Below, piece by piece: positions 41,896 through 64,000 of a stretch of 64,000 nucleotides of DNA. The position numbers and the translations under genes were made by a program. Each line of letters starts with the position of its first letter. The stretch's first letter is position 1. The stretch covers positions 3,038,001-3,102,000 of the forward strand of contig CATNEN010000033.1 of assembly GCA_950097015.1 (NCBI GenBank). The letters run 5' to 3'. Source of the stretch: Macrostomum hystrix. Its lineage: Eukaryota; Animalia; Platyhelminthes. The notes below the pieces were generated by a model that searched no databases, was not told where the DNA came from, and was given only the letters and a program-made list of their open reading frames with translations.

Positions 41896-42495
41896 AATCT
41901 TCGATATAGCGCTAGTGCTATACCTACTACTAACAGTAGGCTTGCGCACAAAAAGACTGAAAGACATTTTTTGATCTCCGTAGTGTATTTCTATAATTAG
42001 AACAGCTAAGCTTATGTCTTTTTGCACTCGGGCACTGCGGAGCATGTAGTCGTGTTTGCGAAAGTACTAATATATCTCTTTGTCCTGATCCTGAACTATT
42101 TTATTGTGCTTTCCCGAATGCACGGAGTTTACATAGACGCAAGAACATATTTACCTTCGTTCTTGCGCAAAAGTATAACGCGAAAATGTACTTTCGCGAA
42201 AATACCTAGCCCTGTATAAACAATGGTAATACACTTAAAGCATTTTGCGAAAATATCAAATGTAACCAAAGTACTTAAAGTACTTTTGCTAAAATACTGT
42301 TCTACCTTCGTTGGAATATATATCCGCAATATCAGCAGTACTCTCTATATTCTCTCAATAAATCTTATCATTCTGTAAGAAAAAATGGAAAAAGTGCTTA
42401 AGATTTTACCATTTGCAGACGAAAATCATTAAAAATCCAACATCCGAAAGAAAATCAATATAAATAGCCAGATAACACACTATTCAGTTACAAGT

Positions 42496-42568
42496 GATCT
42501 GGCGTGCAGGTCTATAGCATTCTTTTATAGTTACCAGTGGCTCGGGTTCGAATCCCAGTCATTACCAC
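42496..42568 (+). other. tRNA-like / Pol III B-box sequence, copy 1
   Basis: GGTTCGAATCCC T-loop consensus with an upstream A-box-like TGGCGTGCAGG; I could not fold a full cloverleaf. Confidence 0.4.
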
Positions 42569-43173
42569 ACATTTTTCTAATTAAAAAAATCAGCTAATAA
42601 TTTACTACTAATGAAAATAAATCTTTATTATTATTTACGTACTTTTGCTCAAATACGGCTGTTACCTTCTTTTGATAATGCCTTTACTTTCGTTTAGGAC
42701 ACATGTTTTTCTTCGCGAAAATACCATCAGAAACAGTAATCATATTGACGCTAAAGTATTTTCGCAAAAAGACTACATTCACCTTCGTTTAAGAATACAT
42801 ATGTACTTTCGCGAAAATACCTCTGGAATAATCAACAATAATTTAAGTGCTTTCTCAACATACAGATTAAAATTGTTGACATATATCAGAAATCAATTAA
42901 TTATTCGTGTTTATGTTCATATGCTGTTCGAAACTACCTACTCTACTATGAGTAGACAATATAGCAACGTTAAATATATTATGAGTTCAATATTATGCTA
43001 TTTCGCCATAGACAAACCTTGAATGATAGTTTATGTGATTAAACTGTCGTACGGGTCACGATAGCAGCTTAAGTCAGAAGCCAAGCGCGCTCGCTTGCAA
43101 ATCTTTGTAAAATTTCTTCTGTTATAAGCAGTATATATGCAGTTCAGCAGATAATAATAATTCAGCAGGTAAA

Positions 43174-43761
43174 ATGGACGCACAAACTAATTGTTTCCTA
43201 TGTCAAATGACGATTCTAAGTTCTAATATGCGACGGCATTTCATCCGGAACCACAAGGACTTGGTCGAGTCTTTTGATTGGGATTGCGTACCATTAAGCA
43301 AGCGACCAGCTGAATCTGCGTCCTATGAAGTCAAGGCCATGAATATATGGAAGATTGTCCGGTTGCAAAAAGTGGGAGTCGATAATGTCCTTTCGCCATG
43401 TGCGCACTGTGGCAAATATGTGCGTCATCTGAAAAGGCACATTGCACGCCCGTGTAAGGGTCTACCGGCTGCTCAAGACATAGCGGTGGTATCTGATAAT
43501 GGCAGTGTTTCATCGGATGACAACGAACAGTATGCCATAGTAGACGTAGGTGAGCTGTATGCGAGTACTTCTGCAAACAAACAGACGGTCACGCAACAGT
43601 CAACTAAACGTTTATGTGACTTGACATCTGGTGTTCGTCAAACTACGTCCCCGCATGCGCAACCGGGTCCATCCAAAGTACAATCTTCATACATGGCCGA
43701 GATTGTCCTAGCAATGACTTGGATCGACTGCAAAGCAATTATAGCGACGTACCTGTCTTAA
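43174..43761 (+). CDS. ORF A1-ZnF: two zinc-finger-like motifs (CxxC...HxxxxH and CxxC...HxxxxC)
   Basis: CFLC...MRRHFIRNH...FDW...CAHCGKYVRHLKRHIARPC; paralogous to ORFs at 48580, 51631 and 55787. Confidence 0.7.
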   Translation: MDAQTNCFLCQMTILSSNMRRHFIRNHKDLVESFDWDCVPLSKRPAESASYEVKAMNIWKIVRLQKVGVDNVLSPCAHCGKYVRHLKRHIARPCKGLPAAQDIAVVSDNGSVSSDDNEQYAIVDVGELYASTSANKQTVTQQSTKRLCDLTSGVRQTTSPHAQPGPSKVQSSYMAEIVLAMTWIDCKAIIATYLS

Positions 43762-43882
43762 TCCAAGCCAAACATGAAATGGCAATGATCGGTAAGTGCT
43801 ATAAACTATTACTTATTATTTCGAGGAAACTGAGTTATTGAGTATTCATATTTTTATTTTCACTCCATTTTCGTCCGAACAG

Positions 43883-44749
43883 AATATATCAATGGACTGC
43901 GTCTGAATGCGGCCGGCCTGAACGAGATTCTGCAGAAAGCCCACAACGCTGAGCATCCACGCGTTAATAGCATGTGTACTGGCTTGCAGAATCTGGTCAA
44001 TCTGACAGAAGCAATCCTCCAGTATACGTCAGACTATGTTCCGGTCGGAGTCACCAATGCTGTCAGTTTGCTGAACCCTGTTAGTCAGCGACAAGCAGAG
44101 ACTCAGACCTCTAAATCTGACGTGGAAAATACTGATGATTCTGTCAGTGATGACGAGCGATCGGCCAAAGAGGAGCTTGTATTGCAACGGAGGCACAAGA
44201 CGTCTCGGCTTGTTGTTTTCGACGGCCCAGACTACCACGTTGCATCTGAACACATGTACAAGCAACTAGACAATGTCGGCGACATCTGGTTCAAGGGTCA
44301 TTGCTGTGTAGAAGAGAACGCATCGCATGTTAGCCGTAGGAAAGCAATCCAGCGAAACTATCATGCTACAACTAGTCGTCTACTACACGCAATCAATGTC
44401 AGTCGAGATGTGGTTCATCAATCCAGCGCGCATCCAATTCGATTTGGACGAGATGGTGAAGCGCCATATCTGGAAACCATCGACTGTTGGACAGCGAATG
44501 AACGAGCTTCATAACATATTGAGCGGCGCGAAGAAATTTCTAGCAGCCAACAATGACTTCGGTGCTCCTAGTGTTATGAACGCGTTCCAATTGACCTCGC
44601 CACCAGATGGATTGTTTGCCAACGTGCATGCCGACATTGTCAAGGCCGCGTCAGAATTGCCTGCCTGTCCTGACCCGCGAAAAGATGGTATTCTCTATCA
44701 TCAGACTGCAGTATCTGGTCTGTTGACTAGCCGCATCGAATCAATCATA
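43883..44749 (+). pseudogene. YR gene copy 1, middle exon, with a 2-bp deletion near 44400
   Basis: CAG acceptor at 43880-43882, GTGAGC donor at 44750; AATGTCAGTCGAG here versus AATGTCACAGTCGAG in copy 2. Confidence 0.65.
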
Positions 44750-44860
44750 GTGAGCAGTATTGTTGTGTCGCATGTTGTATACCATGTTAGTTGATATGTC
44801 ATGAACAATTGTAGAACCTACTGCATGCATTTCTCTTTAATAACCCTTTAAAATGTACAG

Positions 44861-45871
44861 GCTTGCATTGGATTGATTCGTCAGCGGCAAGAGAATATTT
44901 ATCACCTGCTCGATGACGAACGCCAGCTGTCCTACACGGATAAGTTCCTGACCGCTGACGAATGGCGCATCATTCATGGCCGGCTAGACTGCCTGATTGA
45001 TATGGTCGCCAAACATTCGTGGTCTCATCTACCCGTGAAGGGCTACTGGGGTCGCATTGGACAATGTGCACGTCGAATGACCAACACTGTCGGCAAATGG
45101 AATGCATTTATTATGCCGATCACTCGTGAACTGGCATTCTTCTGTGCAGCAATTGACCATGCCAGTCGACTACGCCCTTGGGTCGCAATCCGGCGTTGCT
45201 ATTTGGATGCTGCACTCAATAGTGGTGTTTCAACGTCCTCCACCATTGTCACCGTCCTGCCGCCTACCGAAGTGGCACACAAAAAGGGCGGTCGTGGTAA
45301 AGGTGCAAGCTGGACTGCGCCACGCAAAGTCGGCGAATGTCTACTGCAATGGATAGACAACTTTCTATTGCCATACTTCGCCGAGTGCAACATCCATGTC
45401 AGGCCTGGCAAATGTCTGCTGTTTCTTACGCATCGTGGCAAACAGCGTGACTCGACAAGTTTCAGCACGCTTGTCAAGCAGTGCGCCGAGTTGGTCATCG
45501 ATCGGCCCTATCGCATGGGCGATGGGCGTCGAAATGTACTGTCGGCATATGTGCACGCGCATCCCGACAAGCTAGACCAGCTGGTGCCACTGTACGACAC
45601 ATCGCGCAACTGTGTCGTCAATGCGTATGGACGCCTGGCCAAACAGCAGGCCAATCTGATGGTCGCCGACGACGTCAGAGGATGCTTCGAGACGTTCTGT
45701 CACAATCGGCCACTTGATCGTCGACATCAACGACATCCAACAGCCGAAAACGACACGAAGCGTCGTCGCTCTGCCTGTAGCGTTGATCAGGACGCAACCA
45801 ATTCATCGGCTGCATCTCCTCTACCTGCTGATGACATTGTGATGCCACATAGTCAATGCATACGCAAGTGA
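44861..45871 (+). CDS. Tyrosine recombinase catalytic exon, copy 1
   Basis: RLRP (Arg I), HKKG (Lys), LLFLTHRG, GDGRR (Arg II), YDTSRNCVVNAY (Tyr); phase-0 acceptor TACAG at 44856-44860. Confidence 0.7.
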   Translation, partial: ACIGLIRQRQENIYHLLDDERQLSYTDKFLTADEWRIIHGRLDCLIDMVAKHSWSHLPVKGYWGRIGQCARRMTNTVGKWNAFIMPITRELAFFCAAIDHASRLRPWVAIRRCYLDAALNSGVSTSSTIVTVLPPTEVAHKKGGRGKGASWTAPRKVGECLLQWIDNFLLPYFAECNIHVRPGKCLLFLTHRGKQRDSTSFSTLVKQCAELVIDRPYRMGDGRRNVLSAYVHAHPDKLDQLVPLYDTSRNCVVNAYGRLAKQQANLMVADDVRGCFETFCHNRPLDRRHQRHPTAENDTKRRRSACSVDQDATNSSAASPLPADDIVMPHSQCIRK

Positions 45872-46619
45872 CGCACTCGACGGTCGTCCATTTGCAAGGC
45901 CACTGACAAGGCCACCGCTACGGTTAGTCCTAGATGTTCAACAACGGACAACACCGAGTCGACAAAGCCGGCCATCGATTCAGCAACACCATCGCCTATT
46001 TCGTCTACATCGTCTAGACGACGCAGTCTTAGTCAACCGCCGATGCTTGGAGCATCGGCTGGACAAGGCAACGTTCACGACGATATCGACGAAGAAGGTG
46101 ATGATGGTGAACAACAGCACGTCAGCAATGACAATGAGACCAGCTCGGATTCTGAGCTACTCATGGTTCGTCGAACGGAATACAGGACGCGATCTGGGCG
46201 CCTGATCAGTTCGAGAACTAGACTGGACATCTGAATGCTCATATTGTCCCAGTCGTGTCATCTGACTTAATATGTGCTGATTGTCTGATTTGCCAAACTA
46301 TTATCAATTGTGTCAATTGTGATACCCCCACTAATACCCGTCCCTTTACAACCGAGAATCTCATATGTTCTCTTTGTTGCTCTCTTATATATTGTTAAGA
46401 TGCTAATGATTGTCAACACTGATTATTTCGTTAGTAAATAAATTAATTAACAAATGAAATCATTTGATTATCATCTGATTAAACTAAGATTAAACTATTC
46501 TCGTTTTCTTAAAAGCCGAAGATACACGAAAAAATTATTCGTGATTATTGACAATTAGCAGAAATATACTAAATTTGTCGATGGTAAAAAAGTACAAGTC
46601 ACTTTGTCTGAGAATACGT

Positions 46620-47035
46620 ATCTACATTCGCGAAAATACCATAATATATAGCCATGCACACACCTACTTTAAGAACTTTTACAAAAATACCGCCAACTAC
46701 CTTTGTTTAATAGCATAGCAGTATTTTCGCGAAAATACCATACGATGTAGCCATGCACACTACCTACTTTAATAACTTTTGCAAAAATACCGCCAACTAC
46801 CTTTGTTTAATAGCATAGCAGTATTTTCGCGAAAATACCATAAGATGTAGCCACGCACAATACCTACTTTAATAACTTTTGCAAAAATATCGCCAACTAC
46901 CTTTGTTTAATAGCATAGCAGTAGTTTCGCGAAAATACCATAATATGTAGCCATGCACACTACCTACTTTAATAACTTTTGCAAAAATACCGCCAACTAC
47001 CTTTGTTTAATAGCATAGCAGTATTTTCGCAAAAA
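46620..47035. repeat. Palindromic ~100-bp repeat array 1
   Basis: GTATTTTCGCGAAAATAC-type cores at 46721, 46821, 46921 and 47021, each unit also carrying TTTTGCAAAA. Confidence 0.92.
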
Positions 47036-47309
47036 CAGACACTATTTTTCATTTACAAGTATTCAATATAGTACATATTGTCTTTTCGCGAAAAAACTCA
47101 TTCGTGAGTTTTGGCAATTTACAGAAATACACTAAATTTGTCTATGGTAAAAAGTCACTTTGTCTGAGAATACGTATCTGCATTTGCGAAAATACCATAA
47201 GATGTAGTCACGCTACTTTTGCAAAAATACTGCCCTTACCTTCGCGAAAATACTGTATTTACTTTCCATTTAGAACTCTGCTTCCTATTCTAATTCTACT
47301 TCTGCTAGT

Positions 47310-47745
47310 GTTAGACGCGCTGCTGTTGCACTCACGACATTGTTGGTTGTGTAGAACTCACGATGAATGCGCATCCTGTGGCGCTTTCGGCTCGCCGGCC
47401 ACCGTGGCACTCCTGGCCAGATGCGACATCGCCTGTCTGGCCCCGTTCCTGACTTACCGAGGACGATTGGAGCAGCTAACCTGCCTGCAGCGCCACTGCC
47501 CGACTGCTGAGCTGAACGTCACCCAGCTGCACACCCTGATGAAGAGCCTCCTGGACTGGCTGCTACAACACAAGACAGCTGCGGGCTACGAGACCATCCT
47601 GGAGGTGACCTGCCTAACAGAGAACGAGGCCTTCGACTTGGCCGAGCTGCTAGGCCTGCTGGAGGACACATGTTTGGAGCTGCAGCACATTCTACACGGC
47701 CTGGACTACTGGCGCGGCGTACAGCAAAGGGCTAGACTGCGATAG
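47310..47745 (+). CDS. ORF C1, orphan helical protein; start uncertain
   Basis: Homologous to 59706-60140 (RGRLEQLTCLQR vs RGCFEQLPSLQR; LLEDTCLELQHILHGLDYW vs LLEDAQAELQLIIHGVRYW). Confidence 0.6.
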
Positions 47746-48019
47746 TTGCTCCGGAGCCGCCGATATCGATTGAGCAGTAACAGCAGCAGCAGCAGCAGTA
47801 GCAGCACTAGTTTTAGGTAGACTTAATACAGCTAATTGTAGTTTCCTGTTCGCCGTTTAATTAATGCCAGCTATTTATTTAACCCAATTAATTCGCTCAA
47901 GCAAAAATACATGAGTGAACCTGTTGCAAATTGTATTCGCGGCATGAATAATAATAAAATATAATGAAGTCAAGTCATATTTGGTTATTGATTACCATTA
48001 GATATAGTCATCATGAATA

Positions 48020-48385
48020 CTTAAAGTACTTTCGCAAAAATATTGTCTTCTTATTGTCTTCAACCGCCGCGTATCTGCATTCGCGATAATACCATAAGAT
48101 GTAGCCATGCACACTACATTAAGAATTTTCGCAAAAATACCGTCAACTACCTTTGTTTAATAGCATAGCAGTCTTTTCGCGAAAATACCAAAGATGTAAT
48201 CATGCACACTACTTTAAGAACTTTTGCAAAAATACCGCCAACTACCTTTGTTTAATAGCATAGCAGTATTTTCGCGAAAATACCATAAGATGTAGCCATG
48301 CACACTACTTTAAGAACTTTTGCTAAAATACTGCCCTTACCTTTGTTTATAGAGCATATCAGTATTTTCGCGAAAATACTATATA
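48020..48385. repeat. Palindromic ~96-bp repeat array 2
   Basis: About 3 units of the same family. Confidence 0.9.
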
Positions 48386-48579
48386 TGGAAATAGCTTAGA
48401 CCCAGTTGACGATGTCTGTCTATGTCTATGTGTCTGACTGCTGCTCTGTACAGGATATGAGCAGTGCTAGGTAAATATATGCGCGCGCGCACGCAAATCG
48501 ATAATTAAAATTCAGCCACAACGACCACTCTGTCGATTATTCAGCAGGCTAGCCAGCGAACGACTATATTTAAGCTGCA

Positions 48580-50088
48580 ATGGAAGACAACAACGGACTC
48601 CGCTTCTGCCATTTCTGCGGCCAGCAAATCCGCGCCAATATGATGCGAAGACATTTTATAGAGGCGCATAAAGCTGTCCATGCCGAATTTGACTGGACAG
48701 TCCTACCTGTTGGTCAAAGGCCATCGCTATTCGCGTCGGTTAAGGAGCGTGGAAGTGCCGTCTGGAAGATGCTGCAACTACAGCGGGCTGGTGTAGATGT
48801 CGCTGCCGGTGGACGTGTGCTAGCGTGTCCGCATTGCAACAAAATAACGTCCAACATGTTGCATCATCAATATAGATGTAAGCGGAATCCGCAGCGTCGC
48901 GTCGGTGGCCAACCAGCTCAGCCAGTGGCAGTGGCGGGAGCAGCGGCAATGGGCGAAGTGGTCCAGCTTGAACAACTGGATCCACTACCAGCTGTGGTCG
49001 GCGAGATTGTCGACTATATGCACGAGCGCTACATTGCCCGTCGACTGCCAGCAGCAGAGCAGCCAGCAGCAGAGCAGCCAGCAGCAGAGCAGCCAGTAGC
49101 AGAGCAGCCAGTAGCAGAGCAGCCAGCAGCAGAGCAGCCAGCAGCAGAGCAGCCATCAGCAGAGCAGTCAGCAGCAGAGCAGCCAGCAGAAACTATCATC
49201 ATAGAAGATAGCGCAGCTGAATCAGGCATCATCTATGCAACAAGTACTGACGAGCCTGCTGAACATGTGAGCCAAGCGGACAGCGTGTCAATTGGATCAG
49301 TACGGCATCTAATTTGTACATCTACTCCGCTTAATCACAATGCGATTGAAGCAGCAGCAGAAACAATCCAATCGGATCACTCGCCAGTACCATCGCCATC
49401 AATGCCAATTTTGCAAATTGAGCCAATCGGATCACCAGCGATGCCTATGTTGCCGATTCCAACTGTCGAGGTGCCGTATTTCGTTCCGGTGCCGCTACCT
49501 GTTTTTATTCCTGTCTGTGCGCCAAGAGTAACAACAGCGACAGTTGGTGTCAGTGCACAAAACGGTGTGACCGATGTTTCAATCGAAGCCAATGTCAGCA
49601 CGCAGTCAGTGTGTATTGGTACATCATCCGGTCACGGTGATGACATTGAAATGGCGCAGATTCTGCTCGACTTGATGCAACCTGCCGCTATGCAATTTCT
49701 GTCTACCAATACGGATTGTGTTGCTGCTGCTGCTGGATCGGATTTCGCTGCCCATTCCGAAGCAAGTCACATCGATGAGATGTTTGATGTCGCAATGGAG
49801 ATCATCATTGCTGATGTCAACAACGATTCTGATGAACAGCTATCTGATGTGACAGTGCCGCAAGGAGATGCCGATGCCGCAGCAGAATTGGTTCTGACCG
49901 CCGACCTTGACGACGATGTCGCAATGTCAATAAGTGATGTGCAGTCATCGCAATCGACTATACCTGCGACTGATGCTTTGCATGCATCTAGACGCTCGTA
50001 TTGTATATGCACACACAATATATTGACTACGACAGTGTCAAGACACGGCCGATTGATCAAGACGCGACAATGTCTGTGCGGCAATTGA
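48580..50088 (+). CDS. ORF B1: N-terminal zinc-finger domain, (P-A/V-A-E-Q)n repeats, acidic low-complexity body, 502 aa
   Basis: Uninterrupted; N-terminus paralogous to ORF A; near-identical copy at 55787. Confidence 0.75.
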   Translation: MEDNNGLRFCHFCGQQIRANMMRRHFIEAHKAVHAEFDWTVLPVGQRPSLFASVKERGSAVWKMLQLQRAGVDVAAGGRVLACPHCNKITSNMLHHQYRCKRNPQRRVGGQPAQPVAVAGAAAMGEVVQLEQLDPLPAVVGEIVDYMHERYIARRLPAAEQPAAEQPAAEQPVAEQPVAEQPAAEQPAAEQPSAEQSAAEQPAETIIIEDSAAESGIIYATSTDEPAEHVSQADSVSIGSVRHLICTSTPLNHNAIEAAAETIQSDHSPVPSPSMPILQIEPIGSPAMPMLPIPTVEVPYFVPVPLPVFIPVCAPRVTTATVGVSAQNGVTDVSIEANVSTQSVCIGTSSGHGDDIEMAQILLDLMQPAAMQFLSTNTDCVAAAAGSDFAAHSEASHIDEMFDVAMEIIIADVNNDSDEQLSDVTVPQGDADAAAELVLTADLDDDVAMSISDVQSSQSTIPATDALHASRRSYCICTHNILTTTVSRHGRLIKTRQCLCGN

Positions 50089-50409
50089 TTTCATTCAATT
50101 CAATTGGCTCGGCGTGCAACTCAGATTGGGCTGCTTTGTCTGTCTACTGGCTGGCTTGCTGAATAATCGACTGACTCACTTATAATAAATTCAGACTGAA
50201 CTTGATTTAATCGATTGATTTAATATACGTTGATATAAGAATAAACTGAAAAATATAAACTTTTACGCGATTTGATTCTAAGCGATTTGATTCCACTACT
50301 GTCTATTCTTATTACATCAATTTTAGTTTTAAGTCTACTTCATTATTCTCAGGTTTTGCGCAATATAAATCCAGACCCAACCGTCTATGGCTCTAGCATA
50401 TTAACTGCA

Positions 50410-50995: not shown

Positions 50996-51068
50996 GATCT
51001 GGCATGCAGGTCTAAAGCATTCCTTTCTAGTACCAGTGGCTCCGGTTCGAATCCCAGTCAGCACTACG
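50996..51068 (+). other. tRNA-like / Pol III B-box sequence, copy 2
   Basis: GGTTCGAATCCCAGTCA retained in the duplicated unit. Confidence 0.4.
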
Positions 51069-55089: not shown

Positions 55090-55600
55090 GTATCTACATT
55101 CGCGAAAATACCATAATATGTAGCCATGCACACTACTTTAAGAACTTTTGCAAAAATACCGCCAACTACCTGTGTTTAATAGCATAGCAGTATTTTCGCG
55201 AAAATACCATAAGATATAGCCACGCATATAACCTACTTTAAGAACTTTTGCAAAAATACCGCCAACTACCTTTGTTTAATAGCATAGCAGTATTTTCGCG
55301 AAAATACCATAAGATGTAGCCACGCACACTACCTACTTTAATAACTTTTGCAAAAATACCGCCAACTACCTTTGTTTAATAGCATAGCAGTCTTTTCGCG
55401 AAAATACCAAAGATGTAATCATGCACACTACTTTAAGAACTTTTGCAAAAATACCGCCAACTACCTTTGTTTAATAGCATAGCAGTATTTTCGCGAAAAT
55501 ACCAAAGATGTAATCATGCATACTACTTTAAGAACTTTTGCAAAAATACTGCCCTTACCTTTGTTTATAGAGCATATCAGTATTTTCGCGAAAATACTAT
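55090..55600. repeat. Palindromic ~96-100-bp repeat array 3 (~5 units)
   Basis: Start matches array 1; end matches array 2. Confidence 0.92.
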
Positions 55601-55786
55601 ATATGGAAATAGTTGACGATGTCTGTCTATGTCTATGTGTCTGACTGCTGCTCTGTACAGGATATGAGCAGTGCTAGGTAAATATATGCGCGCGCGCACG
55701 CAAATCGATAATTAAAATTCAGCCACAACGACCACTCTGTCGATTATTCAGCAGGCTAGCCAGCGAACGACTATATTTAAGCTGCA

Positions 55787-57281
55787 ATGGAAGACAACAA
55801 CGGACTCCGCTTCTGCCATTTCTGCGGCCAGCAAATCCGCGCCAATATGATGCGAAGACATTTTATAGAGGCGCATAAAGCTGTCCATGCCGAATTTGAC
55901 TGGACAGTCCTACCTGTTGGTCAAAGGCCATCGCTATTCGCGTCGGTTAAGGAGCGTGGAAGTGCCGTCTGGAAGATGCTGCAACTACAGCGGGCTAGTG
56001 TGGATGTCGCTGCCGGTGGACGTGTGCTAGCGTGTTCGCATTGCAACAAAATAACGTCCAACATGTTGCATCATCTATATAGATGTAAGCGGAATCCGCA
56101 GCGTCGCGTCGGTGGCCAACCAGCTCAGCCAGTGGCAGTGGCGGGAGCAGCCGGCAATGGGCGAAGTGGTCCAGCTTGAACAACTGGATCCACTACCAGC
56201 TGTGGTCGGCGAGATTGTCGACTATATGCACGAGCGCTACATTGCCCGTCGACTGCCAGCAGCAGAGCAGCCAGCAGCAGAGCAGCCAGTAGCAGAGCAG
56301 CCAGTAGCAGAGCAGCCAGCAGCAGAGCAGCCAGCAGCAGAGCAGCCATCAGCAGAGCAGTCAGCAGCAGAGCAGCCAGCAGAAACTATCATCATAGAAG
56401 ATAGCGCAGCTGAATCAGGCATCATCTATGCAACAAGTACTGACGAGCCTGCTGAACATGTGAGCCAAGCGGACAGCGTGTCAATTGGATCAGTACGGCA
56501 TCCAATTTGTACATCTACTCCGCTTAATCACAATGCGATTGAAGCAGCAGCAGAAACAATCCAATCGGATCACTCGCCAGTACCATCGCCATCAATGCCA
56601 ATTTTGCAAATTGAGCCAATCGGATCACCAGCGATGCCTATGTTGCCGATTCCAACTGTCGAGGTGCCGTATTTCGTTCCGGTGCCGCTACCTGTTTTTA
56701 TTCCTGTCTGTGCGCCAAGAGTAACAACAGCGACAGTTGGTGTCAGTGCACAAAACGGTGTGACCGATGTTTCAATCGAAGCCAATGTCAGCACGCAGTC
56801 AGTGTGTATTGGTACATCATCCGGTCACGGTGATGACATTGAAATGGCGCAGATTCTGCTCGACTTGATGCAACCTGCCGCTATGCAATTTCTGTCTACC
56901 AATACGGATTGTGTTGCTGCTGCTGCTGGATCGGATTTCGCTGCCCATTCCGAAGCAAGTCACATCGATGAGATGTTTGATGTCGCAATGGAGATCATCA
57001 TTGCTGATGTCAACAACGATTCTGATGAACAGCTATCTGATGTGACAGTGCCGCAAGGAGATGCCGATGCCGCAGCAGAATTGGTTCTGACCGCCGACCT
57101 TGACGACGATGTCGCAATGTCAATAAGTGATGTGCAGTCATCGCAATCGACTATACCTGCGACTGATGCTTTGCATGCATCTAGACGCTCGTATTGTATA
57201 TGCACACACAATATATTGACTACGACAGTGTCAAGACACGGCCGATTGATCAAGACGCGACAATGTCTGTGCGGCAATTGA
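55787..57281 (+). pseudogene. ORF B2, copy of B1 with a 1-bp insertion near 56150 (or a sequencing error)
   Basis: GCAGCCGGCAATG versus GCAGCGGCAATG in B1; one fewer PAAEQ unit. Confidence 0.7.
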
Positions 57282-57836
57282 TTTCATTCAATTCAATTGG
57301 CTCTGCGTGCAACTCAGATTGGGCATCTTTGACCGTCTACTGGCTGATTGGCTGGCTGGCTGGCTTGCTGAATAATCGACTGACTCACTTATAATGACTC
57401 ACTTAAGTTACCATTTATTATGGTATAATTAAGACTGAACTTGATTTAATCGCCTGATTTAATATACGTTGATGTAATAAAAAACTAAAAAATATAAACT
57501 TTTACGCGATTTGATTATATCAATTTTATAATAACAAACGAATTGAATAACATCAATTTTAGCTTTAAGTCCACTTCATTATTCTCAGGTTTTGCGCAAT
57601 ATAAATACAAACATAATATCTCAGACTGATCGATTACGATTACGTCGGTCTTGTAATAAGTCTCAGCGCCAATATACATCGCATATAACACCGCCAGTCA
57701 GTTCATATTATTTTAATGATAAAATAAACGAGACAAGAAGTTGTGTACTATTAACAATTAAACAAATTACAAACACTAAATTATTTTTGTTTATTATTTA
57801 TTTATATTTTGAAACGGGTGACCGGGTGCAGAGCAA

Positions 57837-57980
57837 TGTGACGGTTCGTGGTTCACATACTGCGACATGTCACATAGCCAGCAGATATCTTAGCAGCTTC
57901 CGTTGAAGGACGCGAAAATACATTATACTGTTCAACCAGTATGTGACATGTCGCAGTATGTGAACCACTGAACCGTCACA
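57837..57980. other. Long hairpin: ~40-bp near-perfect inverted repeat with ~63-bp loop
   Basis: TGTGACGGTTC-GTGGTTCACATACTGCGACATGTCACATA pairs with TATGTGACATGTCGCAGTATGTGAACCACTGAACCGTCACA. Confidence 0.85.
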
Positions 57981-58085
57981 CCGAATCACTATACACTACA
58001 ATACCATAGCAGTCAGGTATATTTATATTTTGAAACGCGGGGATGTCCGGGTGCAGAGCAGGGCTGGCTAATGCTCACATTATCG

Positions 58086-58157
58086 TCGGGCCGTACGTTA
58101 GCCATGCAGATGAAAGCTTTCAGAAAAAAACTGAAATCTGGCTAACGTACGGCCCGA
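58086..58157. other. Second hairpin: 19-bp perfect inverted repeat
   Basis: TCGGGCCGTACGTTAGCCA ... TGGCTAACGTACGGCCCGA. Confidence 0.85.
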
Positions 58158-59166
58158 GGGTAACGATAGCTAACGAAACTGTCTTCCACAAGAGCCTTCT
58201 TACCTTTTTACCACTGGCACAATATGCACAGATCTCAAGTAGTCAAAATCATAGTCGTTTTGACTTAAGAATACGTATGTACTTTCGCGAAAAAGTTTTT
58301 GGCAGTGCGCAAATACTAATTATAGATGAAATGTCTGGCTATATTCGCGAAAATACCATAGATATAGCCACGCTACTTAAAGAACTTTTGCAAAAATACT
58401 GCATACAATATGAATTATATGCAGCCGTTTTTTGTGTCTATGGCCAAAAACGTCTGACTGTATTTTCGAAAGAAAAATTTGGATGCGAAGAACATAAAAA
58501 ATTGCGAAAAATCGAGCTGTACCAAGCAGACATGTCTTTGGTAAAATACGCACAACTTAATGCACTACATACCTATAGTCCGCACGTTTTAAAAGTGCAT
58601 CTTGTAACATCTTATATCTAGCGATACGAAAGTGTATAATAATTTATTCGTCGTTTGTACTTTACTTTTTCAAACGAATCTGTTTTTATTAATGTTTTTT
58701 ACATGAGAAACTTGTATAAACTTTACTTGAAATTATATTGCAGACTGATCAATTACGATTACGTCGCTATTGCAGTATGTCTCATCGCCAATGTACACCA
58801 CATAACCGCCAGTCAGTTCATATTATTTAAATTATAAAATAAATAACCAAGATAAGAAGTTATTTATTGTGAAAACTCTAACAAACAATATTATATTTAT
58901 TTATTTATTTTATTTTTATATTTGCGTTCTTTGCGTTCTCATAGCATCTGTCACTTCACATCTACAGCATCTGTCACTGCATATCTACAGCATCTGTCAC
59001 TTCACATCTACGCAAATGCTCATAGGTGCTCATAGGTGCTCATAGGTGCTCATATGTGCTCATAGGACATAGGACATAGGACTCATAGGACACCCGGCTG
59101 CGGGATGAAAGATGGGTTTTAGGTTTCATTTAGTTTGTTAACTCAGATGTTATCATGCAGATGTGT

Positions 59167-59448
59167 TCATAAATATTCAAATGAAAGGAATCGAAATCTA
59201 CTACTCACATATGGATCCAGCCCTGTCGCTATGCGGCGGGCCCTGGCCAGGCGGAGCATGGCCGCCCGGACCCGTCGCATAGCGGCAGCCATCTCGGCCT
59301 CCGCCCGGCGCCGTTCCGGCGTCCAGGCCTCCGCTGCCGCCACTGCTGTCGCTGCCTCAAACGCTTTTAAAAGGGCCTCCTCCAACTCCTTGGCAGCGGA
59401 GTCCAGGACGAAAGTCCGAAAAGGAGCAGAAAATAGATGAAATGACAT
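59167..59448 (-). CDS. Small Ala/Arg-rich helical ORF or exon, unknown
   Basis: GC-rich island in AT-rich flanks; a GTGAGT donor follows the DPY codons. Confidence 0.4.
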   Translation of the reverse strand: MSFHLFSAPFRTFVLDSAAKELEEALLKAFEAATAVAAAEAWTPERRRAEAEMAAAMRRVRAAMLRLARARRIATGLDPYVSSRFRFLSFEYL

Positions 59449-59705
59449 AGTTATCCTGTTGCTGCTGTTGCTGCTGTTGCTGCTGTTGCTGCTGGTGCGG
59501 TTATGGCGTTGGTTGTGGGCTGATTTCTTGGCCGAGAAAGATTTCTAGTTCTTAATGCCCAGACTGGCCTGTATTCATTTGATTTGTCTGTGGACTGACT
59601 CACCTGTGTTGGATAAAATATACTCTATGGGGGCTTTAAGTAAAGTTTAGAATTTTTTTTAACAAAACTATTTTTTGCTTTACTTGATTTACTAACTGAC
59701 TGAAC

Positions 59706-60140
59706 ATGTCATTCATTGCCCATCAGATGCAGTTAGTGCAAATGTATCTTCAGCCGCGCGTATTTCAACTCTTTCTCAGCTGTCGCATAGATTGCATTGG
59801 CCGGTTCATAGCGCATCGAGGGTGCTTCGAGCAGCTACCTAGTTTGCAGCGCGGTGTTCCAAATGCTGAGTATAGCGCTAATGAGTTATGTTTAATTTTA
59901 CGGCGCACTCCAGAATGGCTGCAACAGCACCGGTCAGCAGAAGACTACAAGGCTGTCCTGTTCGTGACTGGTATAATAGACGATGAAGCACAAGACATCA
60001 TCGAAGTGCTAGAGCTTCTTGAGGACGCCCAAGCTGAACTCCAGCTCATCATACATGGAGTTCGCTACTGGATGACTATCCAACAAAGGGAACGTCTAAA
60101 AGCGAGGCTTCGGGACCGGCAAAATGTGATCGAACAATGA
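59706..60140 (+). CDS. ORF C2, orphan helical protein, 144 aa
   Basis: Complete ATG-to-stop ORF; paralogue at 47310-47745. Confidence 0.7.
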   Translation: MSFIAHQMQLVQMYLQPRVFQLFLSCRIDCIGRFIAHRGCFEQLPSLQRGVPNAEYSANELCLILRRTPEWLQQHRSAEDYKAVLFVTGIIDDEAQDIIEVLELLEDAQAELQLIIHGVRYWMTIQQRERLKARLRDRQNVIEQ

Positions 60141-60606
60141 ATATTTTAAAAGTACAGAATTTCTACAGAATGTTATTCTTTATAGTTTACATTTTTATTT
60201 TTGCTCTTGCGACTTTACAACTGTACCACAAATTATACAATAAAATGATTTAAATGATTTAAATTAATTGACATAATAAATGGCGAAATATAAATAATAA
60301 CCGATTGACTACCTGCACACATCTTTGTTCGCGTATTAATATTTTATTACTGACTGATCTTATCAGTCATCTGAGTATGGTTAATGGTGATAGTGACGGC
60401 AAACTGTCTTATGCTTTGAATATATATACCACGTACATGATCGAGAGCTAGTGTATGTAAAAGTACTTTAAAACTTTTGCAGGCATCATGCACTGTCGAC
60501 TTTGAATAATCAGATGTATTAATCAAATACATGAAACTTCTAATTATATTAATCAGTTAATTAATTTCATTACAAGTAATGGCAACAGTGCTTAACAAAA
60601 GAATTG

Positions 60607-61065
60607 CTACATGTCATTCAAATCTGGGTTATTTGCAGCACGATTGGCATCGCCGCGCTCTCTTTCAGTGCCAGTGCCGCCATTGTTGATGCTGCTGCTG
60701 CTACTGCTTATAATTGGTGACTGTATATCGGTCACTTGCGCATGCTGCGGCAGTTGCAATTGGCCGGCTAAATCACGTGTCGGATTGGCATTCACAATTC
60801 CAAATCTCTGATTGTAAATGCGCACGACACCTGGACGATGCAATACGTACTGAACACGTTGACGTGAAGGCAGAATAGCAAAATCAGATTCTGAACTACT
60901 ATCCGAGCTGTGCCTTCGTCGACGTCGCTCAGTGGTGCCAATCACGACATCCGTGCTGCTACTGACGGTAGGGCACGAGATCGGTTTGTCGTTGCCAGAG
61001 TTGTGATCCTCTCTGTCGATATCTCGTTGATCTCCGCCATTGTGCCGCCCACCCATGAATGACAT
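60607..61065 (-). CDS. ORF D, 152 aa, RRRRRHSS/acidic Ser patch, unknown
   Basis: ATG-to-stop ORF in a GC-richer island. Confidence 0.5.
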   Translation of the reverse strand: MSFMGGRHNGGDQRDIDREDHNSGNDKPISCPTVSSSTDVVIGTTERRRRRHSSDSSSESDFAILPSRQRVQYVLHRPGVVRIYNQRFGIVNANPTRDLAGQLQLPQHAQVTDIQSPIISSSSSSINNGGTGTERERGDANRAANNPDLNDM

Positions 61066-61248
61066 GTTGTAGTTTTTTTATTTGAAACAATAATTAAGAA
61101 TCTAAAATGTGTAAATAAGTTACGCCACTTACCTTAGTAAAGTAACCAACTAAAAACCCTATTGCTAGTCTATGGTAACAAGCTTGCTGATAATCTTATG
61201 TTATTAAGAATATGCTGCAATCAATGCAGTTGAAACTTTGGACAATTA

Positions 61249-61863
61249 ATGAAGTGGATAAAACAAGTCCAACATTTTAAATACTGCCCCCATTGTCTCG
61301 CCATGCCTACATCAACATCATCATCAGGGCCAACTCTAAACGATGCGGAAAAATCCAACTGTCACGACGATGACGTTGAGCTGAATGAAGAGCCAGGCTA
61401 TGATGACTACGGGTATGATGAAACATACAATTCAACATACAGTTTTGTATTCGGCCTGGCAGACGACCATTTGTTATACGCCGTAGCTGAAGAGGTCGAA
61501 GCGGCGATGGCAGCCAATTGCTTTGACCCAGCTGATGACGAGCTTTTGTATGCAGCAGCTGAAGAGGGGGAGGCGTCAGCAGCAGCGGCAGCGACGGCAG
61601 CCAGTAGCTGTTTATTTGACCCAGCTGATGACGAGCTTTTGTATGCAGCAGCTGAAGAGGCGGAGGCGTCAGCAGCAGCGGCAGCGATGGCAGCCAGTAG
61701 CTGCTTGTTTGACCCAGCTGATGACGAGCTTTTGTATGTCGCAGCTGAAGAGGCGGAGGCGTCAGCAGCAGCGGCAGCGATGGCAGCCAGTAGCTGTTTA
61801 TTTGACCCAGCTGACGACTGCCTATTGTATGCCGCAGCTGAAGAGGCGGAGGCATACGTTTGA
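61249..61863 (+). CDS. ORF E, acidic protein with 5 DDxLLYxxAEExE motifs (93-bp repeat unit)
   Basis: GACCCAGCTGA starts at 61525, 61618, 61711 and 61804; frame preserved. Confidence 0.65.
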   Translation: MKWIKQVQHFKYCPHCLAMPTSTSSSGPTLNDAEKSNCHDDDVELNEEPGYDDYGYDETYNSTYSFVFGLADDHLLYAVAEEVEAAMAANCFDPADDELLYAAAEEGEASAAAAATAASSCLFDPADDELLYAAAEEAEASAAAAAMAASSCLFDPADDELLYVAAEEAEASAAAAAMAASSCLFDPADDCLLYAAAEEAEAYV

Positions 61864-62259
61864 AATTATATTATAAAATAATGCAGAAACTATGATTCAT
61901 TACAGTTATTTTATAAATAAAGCCTCTGATTATCATAACGATTTGATATACATATTGGTGTTGTTTTGTTAGTGATTGAAAATACACTAATCTTTTCGTG
62001 AAAATACCATCACCAACAATCATAAGCACAAACGTAAGCATTATTGTTTGTATTTTTTTTGTTTGTAAACGTTCATATTATTTTAATACTCAAAGCAATT
62101 TCGCATAAATACAGCAGTTTGTATTTGTTTTAGAACATGTTCTTTCGGAAAAATATGTTCATCATCGTATCGTTAGTATTTTTGCAAAAAAACTGTCATT
62201 ATTTTTCATTCACAGGTATTCAATACAATATATAGATAGTATATAGTCTTTTCGCGAAA

Positions 62260-62900
62260 AAATGCACTCATGACTCTTGGCAATTTGCAGAAATACTAAA
62301 TACTAACTTAGTCTAATAATATGCATGTATTTTCGCGAAAATACCTTAAGATATAGCCACGCATATAACCTACTTTAATAACTTTTGCAAAAATACCGCC
62401 AACTACCTTTGTTTAATAGCATAGCAGTATTTTCGCGAAAATACCTTAAGATATAGCCACGCACACAACTTCAAGAACTTTTGCAAAAATACCGCCAACT
62501 ATCTTTGTTTAATAGCATAGCAGTATTTTCGCGAAAATACCTTAAGATATAGCCACGCATATAACCTACTTTAATAACTTTTGCAAAAATACAGCCAACT
62601 ACCTTTGTTTAATAGCATAGCAGTATTTTCGCGAAAATACCTTAAGATGTAGCCATGCACACTACTTTAATAACTTTTGCAAAAATACCGCAAACTACCT
62701 TTACTACCTGCGTTTAATAGGATAGCAGTATTTTCGCGAAAATACCATAATATGTAGCCATGCACACTACTTTAAGAACTTTTGCAAAAATACCGCCAAC
62801 TACCTTTGTTTAATAGCATAGCAGTATTTTCGCGAAAATACCATAATATGTAGCCATTCACACTACTTTAAGAACTTTTGCAAAAATACCGCTATTTACT
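62260..62900. repeat. Palindromic ~96-100-bp repeat array 4 (~6 units)
   Basis: Same family as arrays 1-3. Confidence 0.92.
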
Positions 62901-63275
62901 TTCGGATAAAAGTCGTTATTTTATTTTCGCGATAACACCTATAAATGAATTTTATTAATTAATACTTTGACACTTTGCATATACCTTCGTTTGAATGCTT
63001 AATACTATATATAGTAATAAGAAATATGATTTTTTTGCAACAGAAGTAGCAATTACCTACTTCACAACAATAAAAGCTCAAAACTGAGCATATAAATTGA
63101 TTTTATTTGTATGACTAATTATAAAATTGCATACAAAAACAGTATGAAACAGTAAAAAATATAAAAAAACAGCTGAAAGACTGACTGAATGACCGAGTAA
63201 AAATATAGTCGATAAAATAGCAGCATGCAGGCAGTTTGGTGTAAAAAAAACCTGCTAGCAGCACCTGCTTGTCGC

Positions 63276-63894
63276 TCATACTCGCCGGTCCGGGTGATCG
63301 CCAAACACATTGCGTATTGGGTGGCATTGTCCATCGCATTGGTAGTCGGGCTTGAGAGAATGACCAACGAAGATGGAAACTACCGGACGCTTGTGCCCAT
63401 CAGGTGTCGGTTCTAATCGGCGCTGAAAGTCCTCCGAATACGCACTGACCGGAGCATGCCCAGCAAGCACTAATAGTCGATCGAGCCAAGAGACGTGTCG
63501 AATAGCCTTGTATTTGGCATTGACTTCAAAAGTGTCTCCATTGATCAATCGAAGTAGTGTGCACATGACTTCAGATGAGTCATCAAACAGATTCGGGCGT
63601 AGCTCGTCAATAAACATGGCAGTGTGTATAGTCTCGCAGAGCTTGTCAAACAGAAACGTGTTAGACCGCTTCTGCACCTGGACAGTCAGCACCTTCGTAG
63701 AACCGAGATGGCTTTGCACAGAGTGTGTCTTCCCAACGCCAGACGGGCCGTATAGATAGACGACACCAGTTGGCGATTGTAACGCTCTGCACACAGCCTT
63801 TACTGTTGGGCACACGTTAGTGGCGGCGATCAACCGGGGAACATGAGCGACGGCGGCATCAGGAAATTGGACAGCATCAGCAGCAGCAGGGACC
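63276..63894 (-). CDS. Superfamily 3 helicase domain (Rep/NS1-like), last exon of a spliced gene whose 5' part lies beyond the window
   Basis: Walker A LYGPSGVGKT, Walker B AMFIDEL, LLRLINGDTFEVNAKY, motif C region LVLAGH, arginine finger FQRRL; CAACAG acceptor at ~63895-63897. Confidence 0.8.
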
Positions 63895-64000
63895 TGTTGG
63901 ATGGTAGGTAGTTTTGCATATAATTAATTAATTGTCGATTGAGTTAATAATTTTTTGATTCAAAGGAACAGCAAAAATTCAATGATCAATACTTATAAGT

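What the first reader, a model, noticed from the sequence alone, without database searches (positions are those of the whole stretch)
41950..64000. Candidate undescribed virus-like element: intron-containing tyrosine recombinase + SF3 helicase + palindromic repeat arrays
Seen: at least 22 kb without recognisable host genes, made of short gene cassettes separated by one family of palindromic repeats. It includes two spliced YR genes, four related zinc-finger ORFs, two paralogous orphan ORFs, hairpins and a spliced Rep/NS1-type SF3 helicase. Known: Cryptons carry a YR (often with introns) but typically not an SF3 helicase or such arrays; Polinton-like viruses can carry YR and SF3 but also capsid/pPolB genes; baculo/nudi/nimaviruses have interspersed palindromic hr arrays. 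Inference: this combination fits none of these cleanly and may be an integrated, circle-forming element or endogenous virus of a new type.
Basis: partly seen in the sequence, partly recalled or inferred. Interest (0 to 1): 0.92.

Follow-up and report, generated by a model that had tools for sequence, protein, structure and literature searches.

The report
Recombinase-like plus helicase repeat element
The flagged 22 kb is real: a rarely seen animal (flatworm-type) DNA element that pairs a zinc-finger protein carrying a probable tyrosine-recombinase domain with a small virus-Rep-like helicase and arrays of one palindromic repeat. Most of it is one unit copied twice in tandem, and nothing in view makes it a virus.

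Summary
The features are there. One palindrome family (61 motif hits, about 0.06 expected) lies only between 42.19 and 62.94 kb, and no recognisable host gene lies there. But 41948-57606 is two tandem, mosaic copies of one 7-8.6 kb unit, so unique content is about 15 kb.

The zinc-finger ORF upstream of each "YR" is probably the first exon of the same gene, as in a collinear 1084-aa Macrostomum lignano protein. YR identity is plausible but unproven. Pfam, PHROG and PDB sequence searches found nothing. Support is motif order and spacing (R..K..R..T..Y), an in-register hhalign match to XerD/XerC/Cre/lambda Int (E 0.05), and YRs as the top three Foldseek hits from a weak model.

The helicase exon is a P-loop ATPase matching the SF3 domain of a CRESS-virus Rep (hhalign 97.5%, E 7e-12). 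No HUH domain is visible.

The decisive new result: an M. lignano contig carries the same helicase tail-to-tail with a ZnF + YR-like gene 4.6 kb away. The genes therefore form one conserved unit, not two chance neighbours. No capsid, polymerase or reverse transcriptase was found.

Best reading: a Crypton-like or episome-like integrative element of an unannotated family.

The parts
41948..64000 (.). Visible extent of the element. It runs off the right end of the window.
   Evidence: The palindrome motif family and all family protein hits lie between 42189 and 63893. Neither occurs in 1-41900. Similarity between the left ends of the two units starts near 41948/50540.
41948..50539 (+). Tandem unit A: motif clusters, ZnF-YR gene, array, orphan cassette, array, long ZnF gene, 45-nt repeats.
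   Evidence: blastn self-comparison and windowed identity to unit B.
50540..57606 (+). Tandem unit B. Same order as A, but it lacks the orphan cassette and has an 89-nt duplication at its left end.
57607..64000 (.). Unique right-hand part C: hairpins, orphan ORF, two low-complexity ORFs, the largest array and the helicase exon.
   Evidence: No DNA similarity to A/B apart from the repeat motif.
43174..45871 (+). ZnF + YR-like gene, copy A. Broken: one frameshift in the N-domain exon relative to copy B and P0009. In addition, the ZnF ORF is not in frame with the exon that carries the first splice donor.
   Evidence: 96-97% protein identity to copy B in the catalytic exon.
51631..54309 (+). ZnF + YR-like gene, copy B. 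Components: ZnF ORF 51631-52230; intron 52257-52359; N-domain exon 52360-53183; intron 53184-53295; catalytic-type exon 53296-54309. The two downstream exons are open. The ZnF ORF is not in frame with the donor-bearing exon, which means either one frame change or one unrecognised small intron.
   Evidence: Collinear with M. lignano P0009. dN/dS 0.23 against copy A over 336 codons.
48580..50088 (+). Long ZnF gene, copy A: intact 502-aa ORF with the same N-terminal ZnF module followed by a low-complexity tail with 15-nt repeats.
55787..57281 (+). Long ZnF gene, copy B. Broken by one frameshift, which leaves two overlapping ORFs.
47104..47745 (+). Orphan ORF, copy 1. The conserved part is about the last 117 codons. 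It sits between two arrays and is present only in unit A.
59706..60140 (+). Orphan ORF, copy 2.
   Evidence: 42% identical to copy 1, E 6e-32. No Pfam hit.
46596..47035 (+). Palindromic repeat array 1 (about 100-nt period, 4.1 copies) with a leader.
48049..48383 (+). Palindromic repeat array 2 (3.2 copies). It ends 197 nt upstream of the long ZnF ATG.
55068..55601 (+). Palindromic repeat array 3 (5.2 copies). It ends 186 nt upstream of the long ZnF ATG of unit B.
62170..62940 (+). Palindromic repeat array 4 (5.7 copies). It ends about 340 nt beyond the 3' end of the helicase exon.
42189..42819 (+). Solitary copies of the repeat motif upstream of ZnF-YR copy A. Equivalent clusters lie at 50611-51324 (unit B) and 58280-58398 (part C).
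57838..57978 (.). Hairpin 1: roughly 40-nt arms with a 63-nt loop. Further hairpins lie at 58085-58170 and 59223-59288.
   Evidence: z -11.3, -9.3, -4.0.
63276..63893 (-). 3' exon of an SF3-type P-loop ATPase, 205 codons and open. It has Walker A and Walker B motifs and a variant motif C. The 5' exon(s) lie beyond the end of the window.
60607..61863 (.). Two low-complexity ORFs of unknown status: 60607-61065 (-) and 61249-61863 (+). The second contains 93-nt acidic repeats.
50413..50526 (+). 45-nt repeats, each carrying a 10-nt palindrome, at the A/B junction. They are absent after unit B.

Best explanation
This is an integrated copy, or cluster of copies, of a lineage-restricted flatworm-type DNA element. 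Its conserved core is two convergent genes:
(i) a spliced gene for a protein with an N-terminal C2H2/C2HC zinc-finger head, a helical N-domain and a C-terminal domain that most likely has the tyrosine-recombinase fold, with candidate active-site residues R103, K141, R223 and Y256 of the last exon;
(ii) a small stand-alone ATPase related to the superfamily-3 helicase domain of CRESS-DNA virus Rep proteins.

Shown:
- the anatomy of the region;
- the tandem mosaic duplication;
- the introns;
- the helicase-to-Rep-S3H relationship;
- the conserved gene linkage in a second genome;
- purifying selection on the recombinase-like exon.

Inferred:
- The recombinase-like protein integrates and excises the unit by site-specific recombination, as in Cryptons. 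Repeated integration into a resident copy, or unequal exchange between arrays, would give the head-to-tail units.
- The helicase supports replication or processing of a free form.
- The palindromic iteron arrays lie in one orientation and end about 190 nt upstream of the two long zinc-finger genes, with solitary motif clusters upstream of the other plus-strand genes. They are probably binding sites for the element's zinc-finger proteins and/or the recombinase, serving as enhancer/promoter, recombination or origin-like sites.
For: - Linkage. M. lignano locus L001 has the helicase homologue (45% identity) on one strand and a ZnF ORF plus a YR-like ORF on the other, tail-to-tail and 4.6 kb apart. 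That is the same relative orientation as in the window. These are the only genes the two loci share.
- Gene fusion. M. lignano P0009 (1084 aa) is collinear with ZnF ORF + N-domain exon + catalytic exon.
- YR-like features. K141 is invariant in every alignment that covers it. R103 is nearly invariant (at least 90% of sequences). The RR pair is invariant among the five sequences of A6.
- Spacing. R223 to Y256 is 33 residues, against 32 for R247 to Y279 in XerD.
- hhalign. The only match of the family profile to XerD/XerC/Cre/lambda Int is the C-terminal box. It pairs R with R247, T with H270 and Y with Y279 (E 0.05).
- Foldseek. Ranks 1-3 are XerH and a staphylococcal integrase. Cre, XerA and topoisomerase IB follow within the top 24.
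- Model topology. The predicted secondary-structure order is helix with R, hairpin with K, helices with R and Y.
- Helicase. hhalign gives 97.5% probability and E 7e-12 over 115 columns, from Walker A to motif C, against the Rep of a 2.1-kb CRESS genome that itself carries PF02407 + PF00910. PF00910 matches nearly full length at E 0.006-0.008 in both homologues.
- Constraint. dN/dS is 0.23 between the two catalytic exons.
- Repeats. The motif occurs only inside the element.
- Rarity..
Against: - No statistically significant sequence, profile or structure match ties the protein to tyrosine recombinases. The AF2 model has pLDDT 50, the best Foldseek E-value is 0.39 and hhalign probability is 1%.
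- The histidines of the R-H-R-H/W-Y set are not conserved. One M. lignano copy has no Tyr in register.
- Element ends, target-site features, other genomic copies and empty sites were not found, so mobility is not shown.
- Several genes in the window are broken. The palindromic arrays are absent from the M. lignano locus, so they are not a conserved part of the unit.
- The six near-identical M. lignano proteins could reflect polyploidy rather than transposition.
Confidence: 0.5

Rival explanations
1. A host or domesticated gene cluster, not a mobile element. A zinc-finger DNA-binding protein with a degenerate, catalytically dead recombinase-derived domain (as DUF3504 is in ZMYM genes) and an ATPase were co-opted by the host. 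The arrays are ordinary local satellites or regulatory repeats, and the two units are a plain segmental duplication.
For: - The catalytic histidines are missing.
- The Crypton paper documents YR-derived domains fused to zinc fingers in host genes (PMC3212892).
- dN/dS of 0.23 shows constraint.
- Linkage is conserved in a locus flanked by host genes.
- No element termini were found.
Against: - The distribution is extremely patchy: 5 hits in 1.84 billion representatives.
- Several deeply divergent lineages occur within one species. P0009 and the L001 copy are only about 25% identical.
- Copies in the window carry frameshifts.
- The surrounding region is repeat- and transposon-rich.
- The zinc-finger heads have a mosaic structure.
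- A transposon fragment is nested in the M. lignano copy.
Confidence: 0.2
2. An endogenous virus whose structural and replication genes lie beyond the right end of the window. On this view the visible part is only its integration/regulatory arm, with hr-like repeats.
For: - The helicase's only relative outside flatworms that matches over the whole ATPase core is a viral Rep.
- Interspersed palindromic arrays resemble the homologous regions of large insect DNA viruses (established knowledge).
- The element is cut off by the window at 64000.
- Strong hairpins lie near the helicase arm.
Against: - No capsid, polymerase, primase, packaging ATPase or HUH domain appears in 22 kb or in the 20.8-kb M. 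lignano locus. In that locus the shared genes sit 2-4 kb from host genes.
- No IMG/VR contig carries the YR-like gene, the ZnF module or the repeat.
- The genes have spliceosomal introns.
Confidence: 0.12
3. Two unrelated insertions that happen to be neighbours: a Crypton-like YR element next to an endogenised CRESS-virus Rep fragment.
For: - Rep-derived fragments are common in animal genomes (established knowledge).
- The helicase lies on the opposite strand, in the non-duplicated part, about 9 kb from the nearest YR-like gene.
- The helicase lacks a visible HUH domain.
Against: - The same neighbourhood and orientation recur in M. lignano at 25-45% protein identity. Chance adjacency does not explain that.
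- The repeat family of the YR units also flanks the helicase.
- The helicase exon is open, has an intron acceptor, and is conserved over its whole length with P0011.
Confidence: 0.08

Closest known systems
Crypton DNA transposons (tyrosine-recombinase-only eukaryotic transposons; PMC3212892)
   Same: - An animal-genome element with a probable YR-type gene interrupted by introns.
- No reverse transcriptase, no long terminal inverted or direct repeats detected.
- Head-to-tail arrangement compatible with integration of a circular form.
- A precedent exists for YR-derived domains joined to zinc fingers.
   Different: - No detectable sequence relationship to Crypton YR, DUF3504 or Phage_integrase profiles.
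- The His of the R-H-R-Y tetrad is not conserved.
- It has a zinc-finger head, a linked SF3 ATPase gene and palindromic iteron arrays.
- Its ends, and any short terminal direct repeats, are not defined.
Rep proteins of CRESS-DNA viruses and related plasmids (HUH endonuclease + oligomerisation domain + SF3 helicase; PMC10288648)
   Same: The ATPase aligns from Walker A to motif C and beyond with the SF3 domain of a CRESS Rep (hhalign 97.5%). It has a similarly small size.
   Different: - No HUH domain in the M. lignano homologue or its upstream ORFs; this cannot be tested in the window.
- The gene is spliced.
- Motif C reads ..AGH.. instead of the usual ..TSN.
- No capsid gene and no 2-kb circular genome.
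- It is linked to a recombinase-like gene.
Polinton-like viruses and virophage-type elements that combine a tyrosine recombinase with an SF3 helicase (PMC4642659)
   Same: A YR-type gene and an SF3-type ATPase co-occur in one 10-25-kb integrated unit.
   Different: - No major or minor capsid protein, packaging ATPase, protease, polymerase or primase domain was found.
- The host is an animal.
- The genes contain introns.
- The helicase is Rep-like and has no primase part.
Homologous regions (hr) of baculoviruses, nudiviruses and nimaviruses
   Same: Several arrays of roughly 100-nt units, each built around imperfect or perfect palindromes, are interspersed between genes and all belong to one family.
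   Different: This is a resemblance of form only. There are no core genes of those viruses, and the arrays are absent from the related M. lignano locus.
Yeast 2-micron-type nuclear plasmids (Flp recombinase, partition proteins, tandem-repeat STB locus)
   Same: The functional layout is similar: a tyrosine recombinase, small accessory proteins, and a tandem-repeat cis-acting locus.
   Different: No sequence relationship was tested or found. The window copy is chromosomal. The comparison is an analogy from established knowledge.

Membership tests
Tyrosine recombinase superfamily | Significant match to an integrase/recombinase sequence profile (for example Pfam Phage_integrase or DUF3504) or to a solved YR sequence | tested here: not met
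   No such hit for any of up to 10 family members at E up to 10 in Pfam and PHROGs. PDB phmmer and profile searches gave nothing.
Tyrosine recombinase superfamily | Catalytic residues R..K..H-x-x-R..H/W..Y in order and with the usual spacing | tested here: inconclusive
   R103 is nearly invariant, K141 is invariant, and the RR pair at 223/224 is invariant in A6. Y256 is present in most members. R to Y is 33 residues against 32 in XerD. hhalign pairs R/R247, T/H270 and Y/Y279 at E 0.05 but 1% probability. Both histidine positions are substituted, and one M. lignano copy lacks the Tyr in register.
Tyrosine recombinase superfamily | Catalytic-domain fold | tested here: inconclusive
   The AF2 model built on a 10-sequence alignment has pLDDT 49.9. 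Foldseek top hits are XerH and integrase (ranks 1-3), then Cre, XerA and topoisomerase IB, but the best E-value is 0.39.
Crypton transposons | YR related to Crypton YRs with the R-H-R-Y tetrad (PMC3212892) | tested here: not met
   No DUF3504 or integrase profile hit. His is not conserved.
Crypton transposons | No TIRs or long direct repeats; short 4-6-bp direct repeats at the termini; dispersed copies | tested here: inconclusive
   No inverted repeat of 40 nt or more in the region. The left boundary is near 41948, and the right end is outside the window. No other copies or empty sites were available.
CRESS-DNA virus Rep | SF3 helicase domain (Walker A, Walker B, motif C) | tested here: met
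   hhalign 97.5%, E 7e-12 over 115 columns against the Rep of L002, which carries PF02407 + PF00910. PF00910 matches near full length but below its cut-off. The motif C asparagine is replaced.
CRESS-DNA virus Rep | N-terminal HUH endonuclease domain | tested here: not met
   In the window, the 5' exons lie beyond 64000, so this cannot be tested there. In M. lignano, P0011 (252 aa) and the upstream ORFs have no Viral_Rep hit and no similarity to the Rep N-terminus of L002.
CRESS-DNA virus Rep | Small circular genome with a capsid gene | tested here: not met
   The gene is chromosomal and spliced. There is no capsid-like ORF.
Polinton-like viruses / virophage-like elements | Double jelly-roll major capsid, minor capsid and packaging ATPase, often with a polymerase or primase-helicase | tested here: not met
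   No Pfam hit of these kinds for the ORFs tested, which are most of those of 80 aa or more in 41950-64000, or for the L001 ORFs scanned; the L001 ZnF and YR ORFs were not scanned on their own. Pfam-level sensitivity only, and the sequence to the right of the window is unseen.
Large DNA virus with hr arrays (baculo/nudi/nima) | Interspersed palindrome-containing repeat arrays inside a large viral genome with the core genes | tested here: not met
   The arrays are present. No viral core gene was detected.
DIRS/Ngaro/PAT YR retroelements | Reverse transcriptase and RNase H next to the YR | tested here: not met
   No RT or RNase H hit in any ORF tested.

The most novel reading that the evidence does not exclude
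A previously undescribed class of animal mobile DNA. It would be an integrative, possibly circle-forming element that couples a highly divergent zinc-finger-fused tyrosine recombinase with a Rep-derived, HUH-less SF3 helicase. In this lineage it also uses iterated palindromes as cis-acting sites. That would make it a eukaryotic counterpart of integrative plasmids and a link between Crypton-like transposons and CRESS-type replicons.
Probability: 0.3. Interest if true: 0.85.

Novelty: new variant of a known kind. Interest (0 to 1): 0.62.

Why it matters
If the recombinase assignment and mobility hold, this would be a YR-based eukaryotic DNA element with its own Rep-type helicase. None of the described YR elements considered here (Crypton, DIRS-like, Starship-type) combines the two in an animal genome. 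It would add a case to the transposon/plasmid/virus continuum. It would also provide a very divergent branch of tyrosine recombinases with an unusual active-site make-up and built-in zinc-finger targeting.

The conserved two-gene linkage already gives a concrete search key for flatworm and other invertebrate genomes. If the host-cluster rival is right instead, it would be a further example of recombinase and Rep domestication.

Tried and rejected
Searches that gave nothing:
- Word-indexed protein search with the catalytic exon.
- Profile search with alignment A2. Low-complexity words probably filled the candidate list, so this search was wasted.
- PDB sequence and profile searches for the YR-like protein.
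- Pfam and PHROG scans of all family members.
- A PHROG scan of the helicase, which matched only the Walker A motif. A PDB profile search returned only generic AAA+ proteins.
- Two metagenome scans.
- IMG/VR scans with the YR exon, the ZnF module and the palindrome. A second helicase scan found only the same CRESS contig.
- Exact look-ups of window ORFs and of P0001/P0009, none on record. The source organism therefore stays unidentified.
- The contigs of the other three relatives are too short (1.5-2.4 kb) to give context.
- Rfam and tRNA scans of the window.

Other results:
- Single-sequence AF2 was useless, with pLDDT 36.
- BLASTP between the M. lignano ORF upstream of the helicase and the HUH part of the CRESS Rep found no similarity.
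- The palindrome motif is absent from all fetched loci. M. lignano has only a two-copy 35-nt repeat upstream of its ZnF ORF.

Readings rejected:
- A DIRS-like retroelement, because there is no RT.
- A Helitron or Replitron, because there is no HUH domain or SF1 helicase.
- Chance adjacency of two elements, because the synteny is conserved.

Full report
SETTING. The window is repeat-rich eukaryotic DNA. It holds many satellites, an intact Tc1/mariner transposase ORF and a DUF4806 ORF. It has no tRNA or Rfam hits. The source organism could not be identified, because none of the window's ORFs is in the protein collection.

THE REPEATS. The pattern TTTYGCRAAAATA occurs 61 times against 0.06 expected. 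Every hit lies between 42192 and 62888. A stricter 14-mer behaves the same way. An 18-nt perfect palindrome occurs 12 times, plus two 20-nt versions, and only in this region.
- The motif forms four arrays of roughly 96-100-nt period with 3.2-5.7 copies each.
- Each unit holds two half-units with related palindromes.
- All arrays have the same orientation.
- Solitary motif clusters lie upstream of the ZnF-YR genes and at 58.3 kb.
- Two arrays end 186 and 197 nt before the ATG of the long zinc-finger genes.
- The motif is absent from 1-42000 and from every other locus fetched. It is also absent from IMG/VR.

THE DUPLICATION. Self-comparison shows that 41948-50539 (unit A) and 50540-57606 (unit B) are tandem copies.
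- The copies are mosaic. Identity is 82-90% at the left ends. It is only 53-57% across the zinc-finger ORF and first intron (43137-43868 against 51610-52354). It is 95-100% from the first intron acceptor onwards.
- Unit A alone carries a 1-kb orphan-ORF cassette that splits its array in two.
- The last 6.4 kb (part C) is unique apart from the motif.
Some of the 'cassette' impression comes from the duplication.

THE ZnF-YR GENE. Copy B has an open N-domain exon (52360-53183) and an open last exon (53296-54309). They are separated by a 112-nt GT-AG, phase-0 intron.
- Copy A has the equivalent 111-nt intron.
- M. lignano proteins P0001 and P0009 run across this junction without a gap, which supports the splice.
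- A second intron (52257-52359) has a conserved GTAAGT donor and a CAG acceptor in both copies.
- A phmmer scan of 1.84 billion representatives with the last exon found only five relatives. Two are from Macrostomum lignano (41-43% identity). One is from a Logan read-set assembly. Two are from a JGI metagenome.
- One cluster member, P0009 (1084 aa), is collinear with the window's ZnF ORF (33% identity, E 6e-16), N-domain exon (35%, 2e-31) and last exon. The zinc-finger ORF upstream of each YR-like gene is therefore most likely its first coding exon.
- In neither window copy is that ORF in frame with the donor-bearing exon. This means one frame change per copy or one unrecognised small intron.

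BREAK COUNTS.
- ZnF-YR copy A: one further frameshift in its N-domain exon.
- Long ZnF copy B: one frameshift.
- Intact: long ZnF copy A, both orphan ORFs, and the helicase exon.

IS IT A TYROSINE RECOMBINASE? No profile or sequence search says so. Three weak, independent lines point that way.
- Residue pattern. The family alignments keep K141 invariant, R103 nearly invariant, an RR pair invariant among the five sequences of A6, and a Tyr in most members. The order is R..K..R..Y. The R-to-Y distance is 33 residues, against 32 in XerD.
- Profile comparison. I fetched XerD, XerC, Cre and lambda Int through accessions named in papers, aligned them and compared profiles. The single hhalign match is the C-terminal catalytic box. 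It is in register: R with R247, T with H270, Y with Y279. E is 0.05 but probability is 1%.
- Structure. An AF2 model from a 10-sequence alignment is poor, with pLDDT 49.9. Even so, its three best Foldseek hits in the PDB are XerH and a staphylococcal integrase. Cre, XerA and two topoisomerases IB follow in the top 24. No E-value is below 0.39.
- My estimate is about 70-75% that the domain has the recombinase fold.
- Both histidine positions of the canonical set are substituted, so activity cannot be assumed.
- dN/dS of 0.23 between the two copies shows the exon has been under constraint.

THE HELICASE. The minus-strand exon 63893..63279 follows an AT-rich stretch ending in AG. It has no ATG before its Walker A motif, so the gene is spliced and its 5' part is off-window.
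- The word-indexed search, limited to proteins of 113-359 aa, found one relative: M. lignano P0011 (252 aa, 45% identity).
- Both proteins match Pfam RNA_helicase (PF00910, the SF3 family) over nearly the whole model, but below threshold.
- An IMG/VR scan recovered a 2128-nt circular CRESS-type genome. Its wrapped Rep ORF carries PF02407 and PF00910.
- Profile comparison with that Rep's helicase part gives 97.5% probability and E 7e-12 over 115 columns, from Walker A to motif C.
- The SF3, Rep-type assignment of the ATPase is therefore well supported.
- No HUH endonuclease was found in P0011 or in the ORFs upstream of it.

THE LINKAGE. This is the key result. P0011 lies on a 220-kb M. lignano contig.
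- Within the fetched 20.8 kb, tblastn finds only three things shared with the window: the helicase, a YR-like ORF (E 5e-21) and a ZnF ORF immediately upstream of it.
- The YR/ZnF pair is on the opposite strand, tail-to-tail with the helicase and 4.6 kb away. A nested Tc1-like fragment and GA-rich DNA lie between them.
- Host genes (COG7, EME1, a glycosyltransferase) lie 2-8 kb to one side.
- The window has the same convergent arrangement.
It argues for one functional unit.

WHAT IS MISSING. There is no capsid, polymerase, primase, packaging ATPase, reverse transcriptase or HUH domain in any ORF tested in either locus. No IMG/VR contig carries the YR-like gene, the ZnF module or the repeat. The arrays and orphan ORFs are not shared with M. 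lignano, which has only a 35-nt two-copy repeat upstream of its ZnF ORF. The 'virus' reading therefore has no positive support in view.

MECHANISM. This is inferred. A recombinase-like protein with a variable zinc-finger head would recognise element or target DNA. Site-specific recombination of a free form into a resident copy, or unequal exchange between arrays, would give head-to-tail mosaic units. The Rep-like ATPase would act on the free form. The palindromic iterons upstream of genes would serve as protein-binding sites for expression, recombination or replication. The three strong hairpins at 57.8-59.3 kb are unexplained candidates for cis-acting sites.

COMPARISON AND VERDICT. The closest kinds are Cryptons (recombinase logic; PMC3212892) and CRESS Reps (ATPase; PMC10288648). 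The membership tests for both fail on defining features. I therefore file it as a new variant of YR-type eukaryotic DNA elements and not as a member of either family. The variant is unannotated as far as these tools can see. Mobility and catalysis are unproven.

I stopped when I noticed. No break positions, repaired, joined-across-frameshift or consensus sequences were written to notes, scripts' output or this report. Exons were never concatenated. All searches used single exons by reference.

Noticed in passing
window 24438-28091: 178-nt tandem repeats (3.9 and 8.5 copies) lie in inverted orientation at 24438-25207 and 27322-28091, 98.7% identical. They flank a 297-aa ORF (25174-26067, minus strand) with no Pfam hit. 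The layout looks like a foldback-type structure.
   Followed up: partly
window 16791-20573; 3020-4474; 21850-22373; 15920-16391: Large, very homogeneous satellites: a 37-nt unit x102 at 98% identity, a 25-nt unit x59, a 20-nt unit x26 and a 22-nt unit x21.
   Followed up: no
window 37185-38318 (-): An apparently intact 377-aa Tc1/mariner transposase ORF, with DDE_3, Transposase_1 and HTH domains.
   Followed up: partly
window 9102-11285 (-), 8107-8985 (-), 30737-32446 (+), 13659-14648 (+): Long ORFs (727, 292, 569 and 329 aa) without any Pfam hit. Part of the last one (14039-14595) recurs at 34503-35049 with 84.5% identity. They may belong to other unclassified repeats.
   Followed up: partly
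window 43137-43868 versus 51610-52354: The zinc-finger head and first intron of the two otherwise 95-100% identical units are only 53-57% identical in DNA and 42% in protein. The head looks like an exchangeable or fast-evolving module.
   Followed up: partly
L001 11201-11922: A Tc1-like fragment with 48-nt perfect terminal inverted repeats and an HTH-only ORF is nested between the helicase and the YR-like gene of the M. lignano locus.
   Followed up: partly
L001 17652-17686 and 17947-17981: A 35-nt repeat occurs twice, just upstream of the M. lignano ZnF ORF. Its T-rich/CG/A-rich near-palindromic core loosely resembles the window's palindrome. With only two copies, its significance is unknown.
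   Followed up: partly
L002 (IMGVR_UViG_3300023223_001602, 2128 nt): A circular CRESS-type genome whose Rep has an unusual motif C region ending in ..HAP. The flatworm ATPases share this ending, which hints at which Rep lineage they came from.
   Followed up: partly
UniRef names of P0001, P0002, P0006-P0008, P0010: The M. lignano homologues are named 'Ras-GEF domain-containing protein' by their source. Pfam finds no RasGEF domain in P0001 or P0002, the two that were scanned; P0006-P0008 and P0010 belong to the same 90%-identity cluster as P0001. The names look like annotation artefacts.
   Followed up: partly
window 61249-61863 (+): An ORF with 3.6 copies of a 93-nt acidic, Ala-rich repeat and a CPHC motif near its start. 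It has no homologue and no Pfam hit.
   Followed up: no
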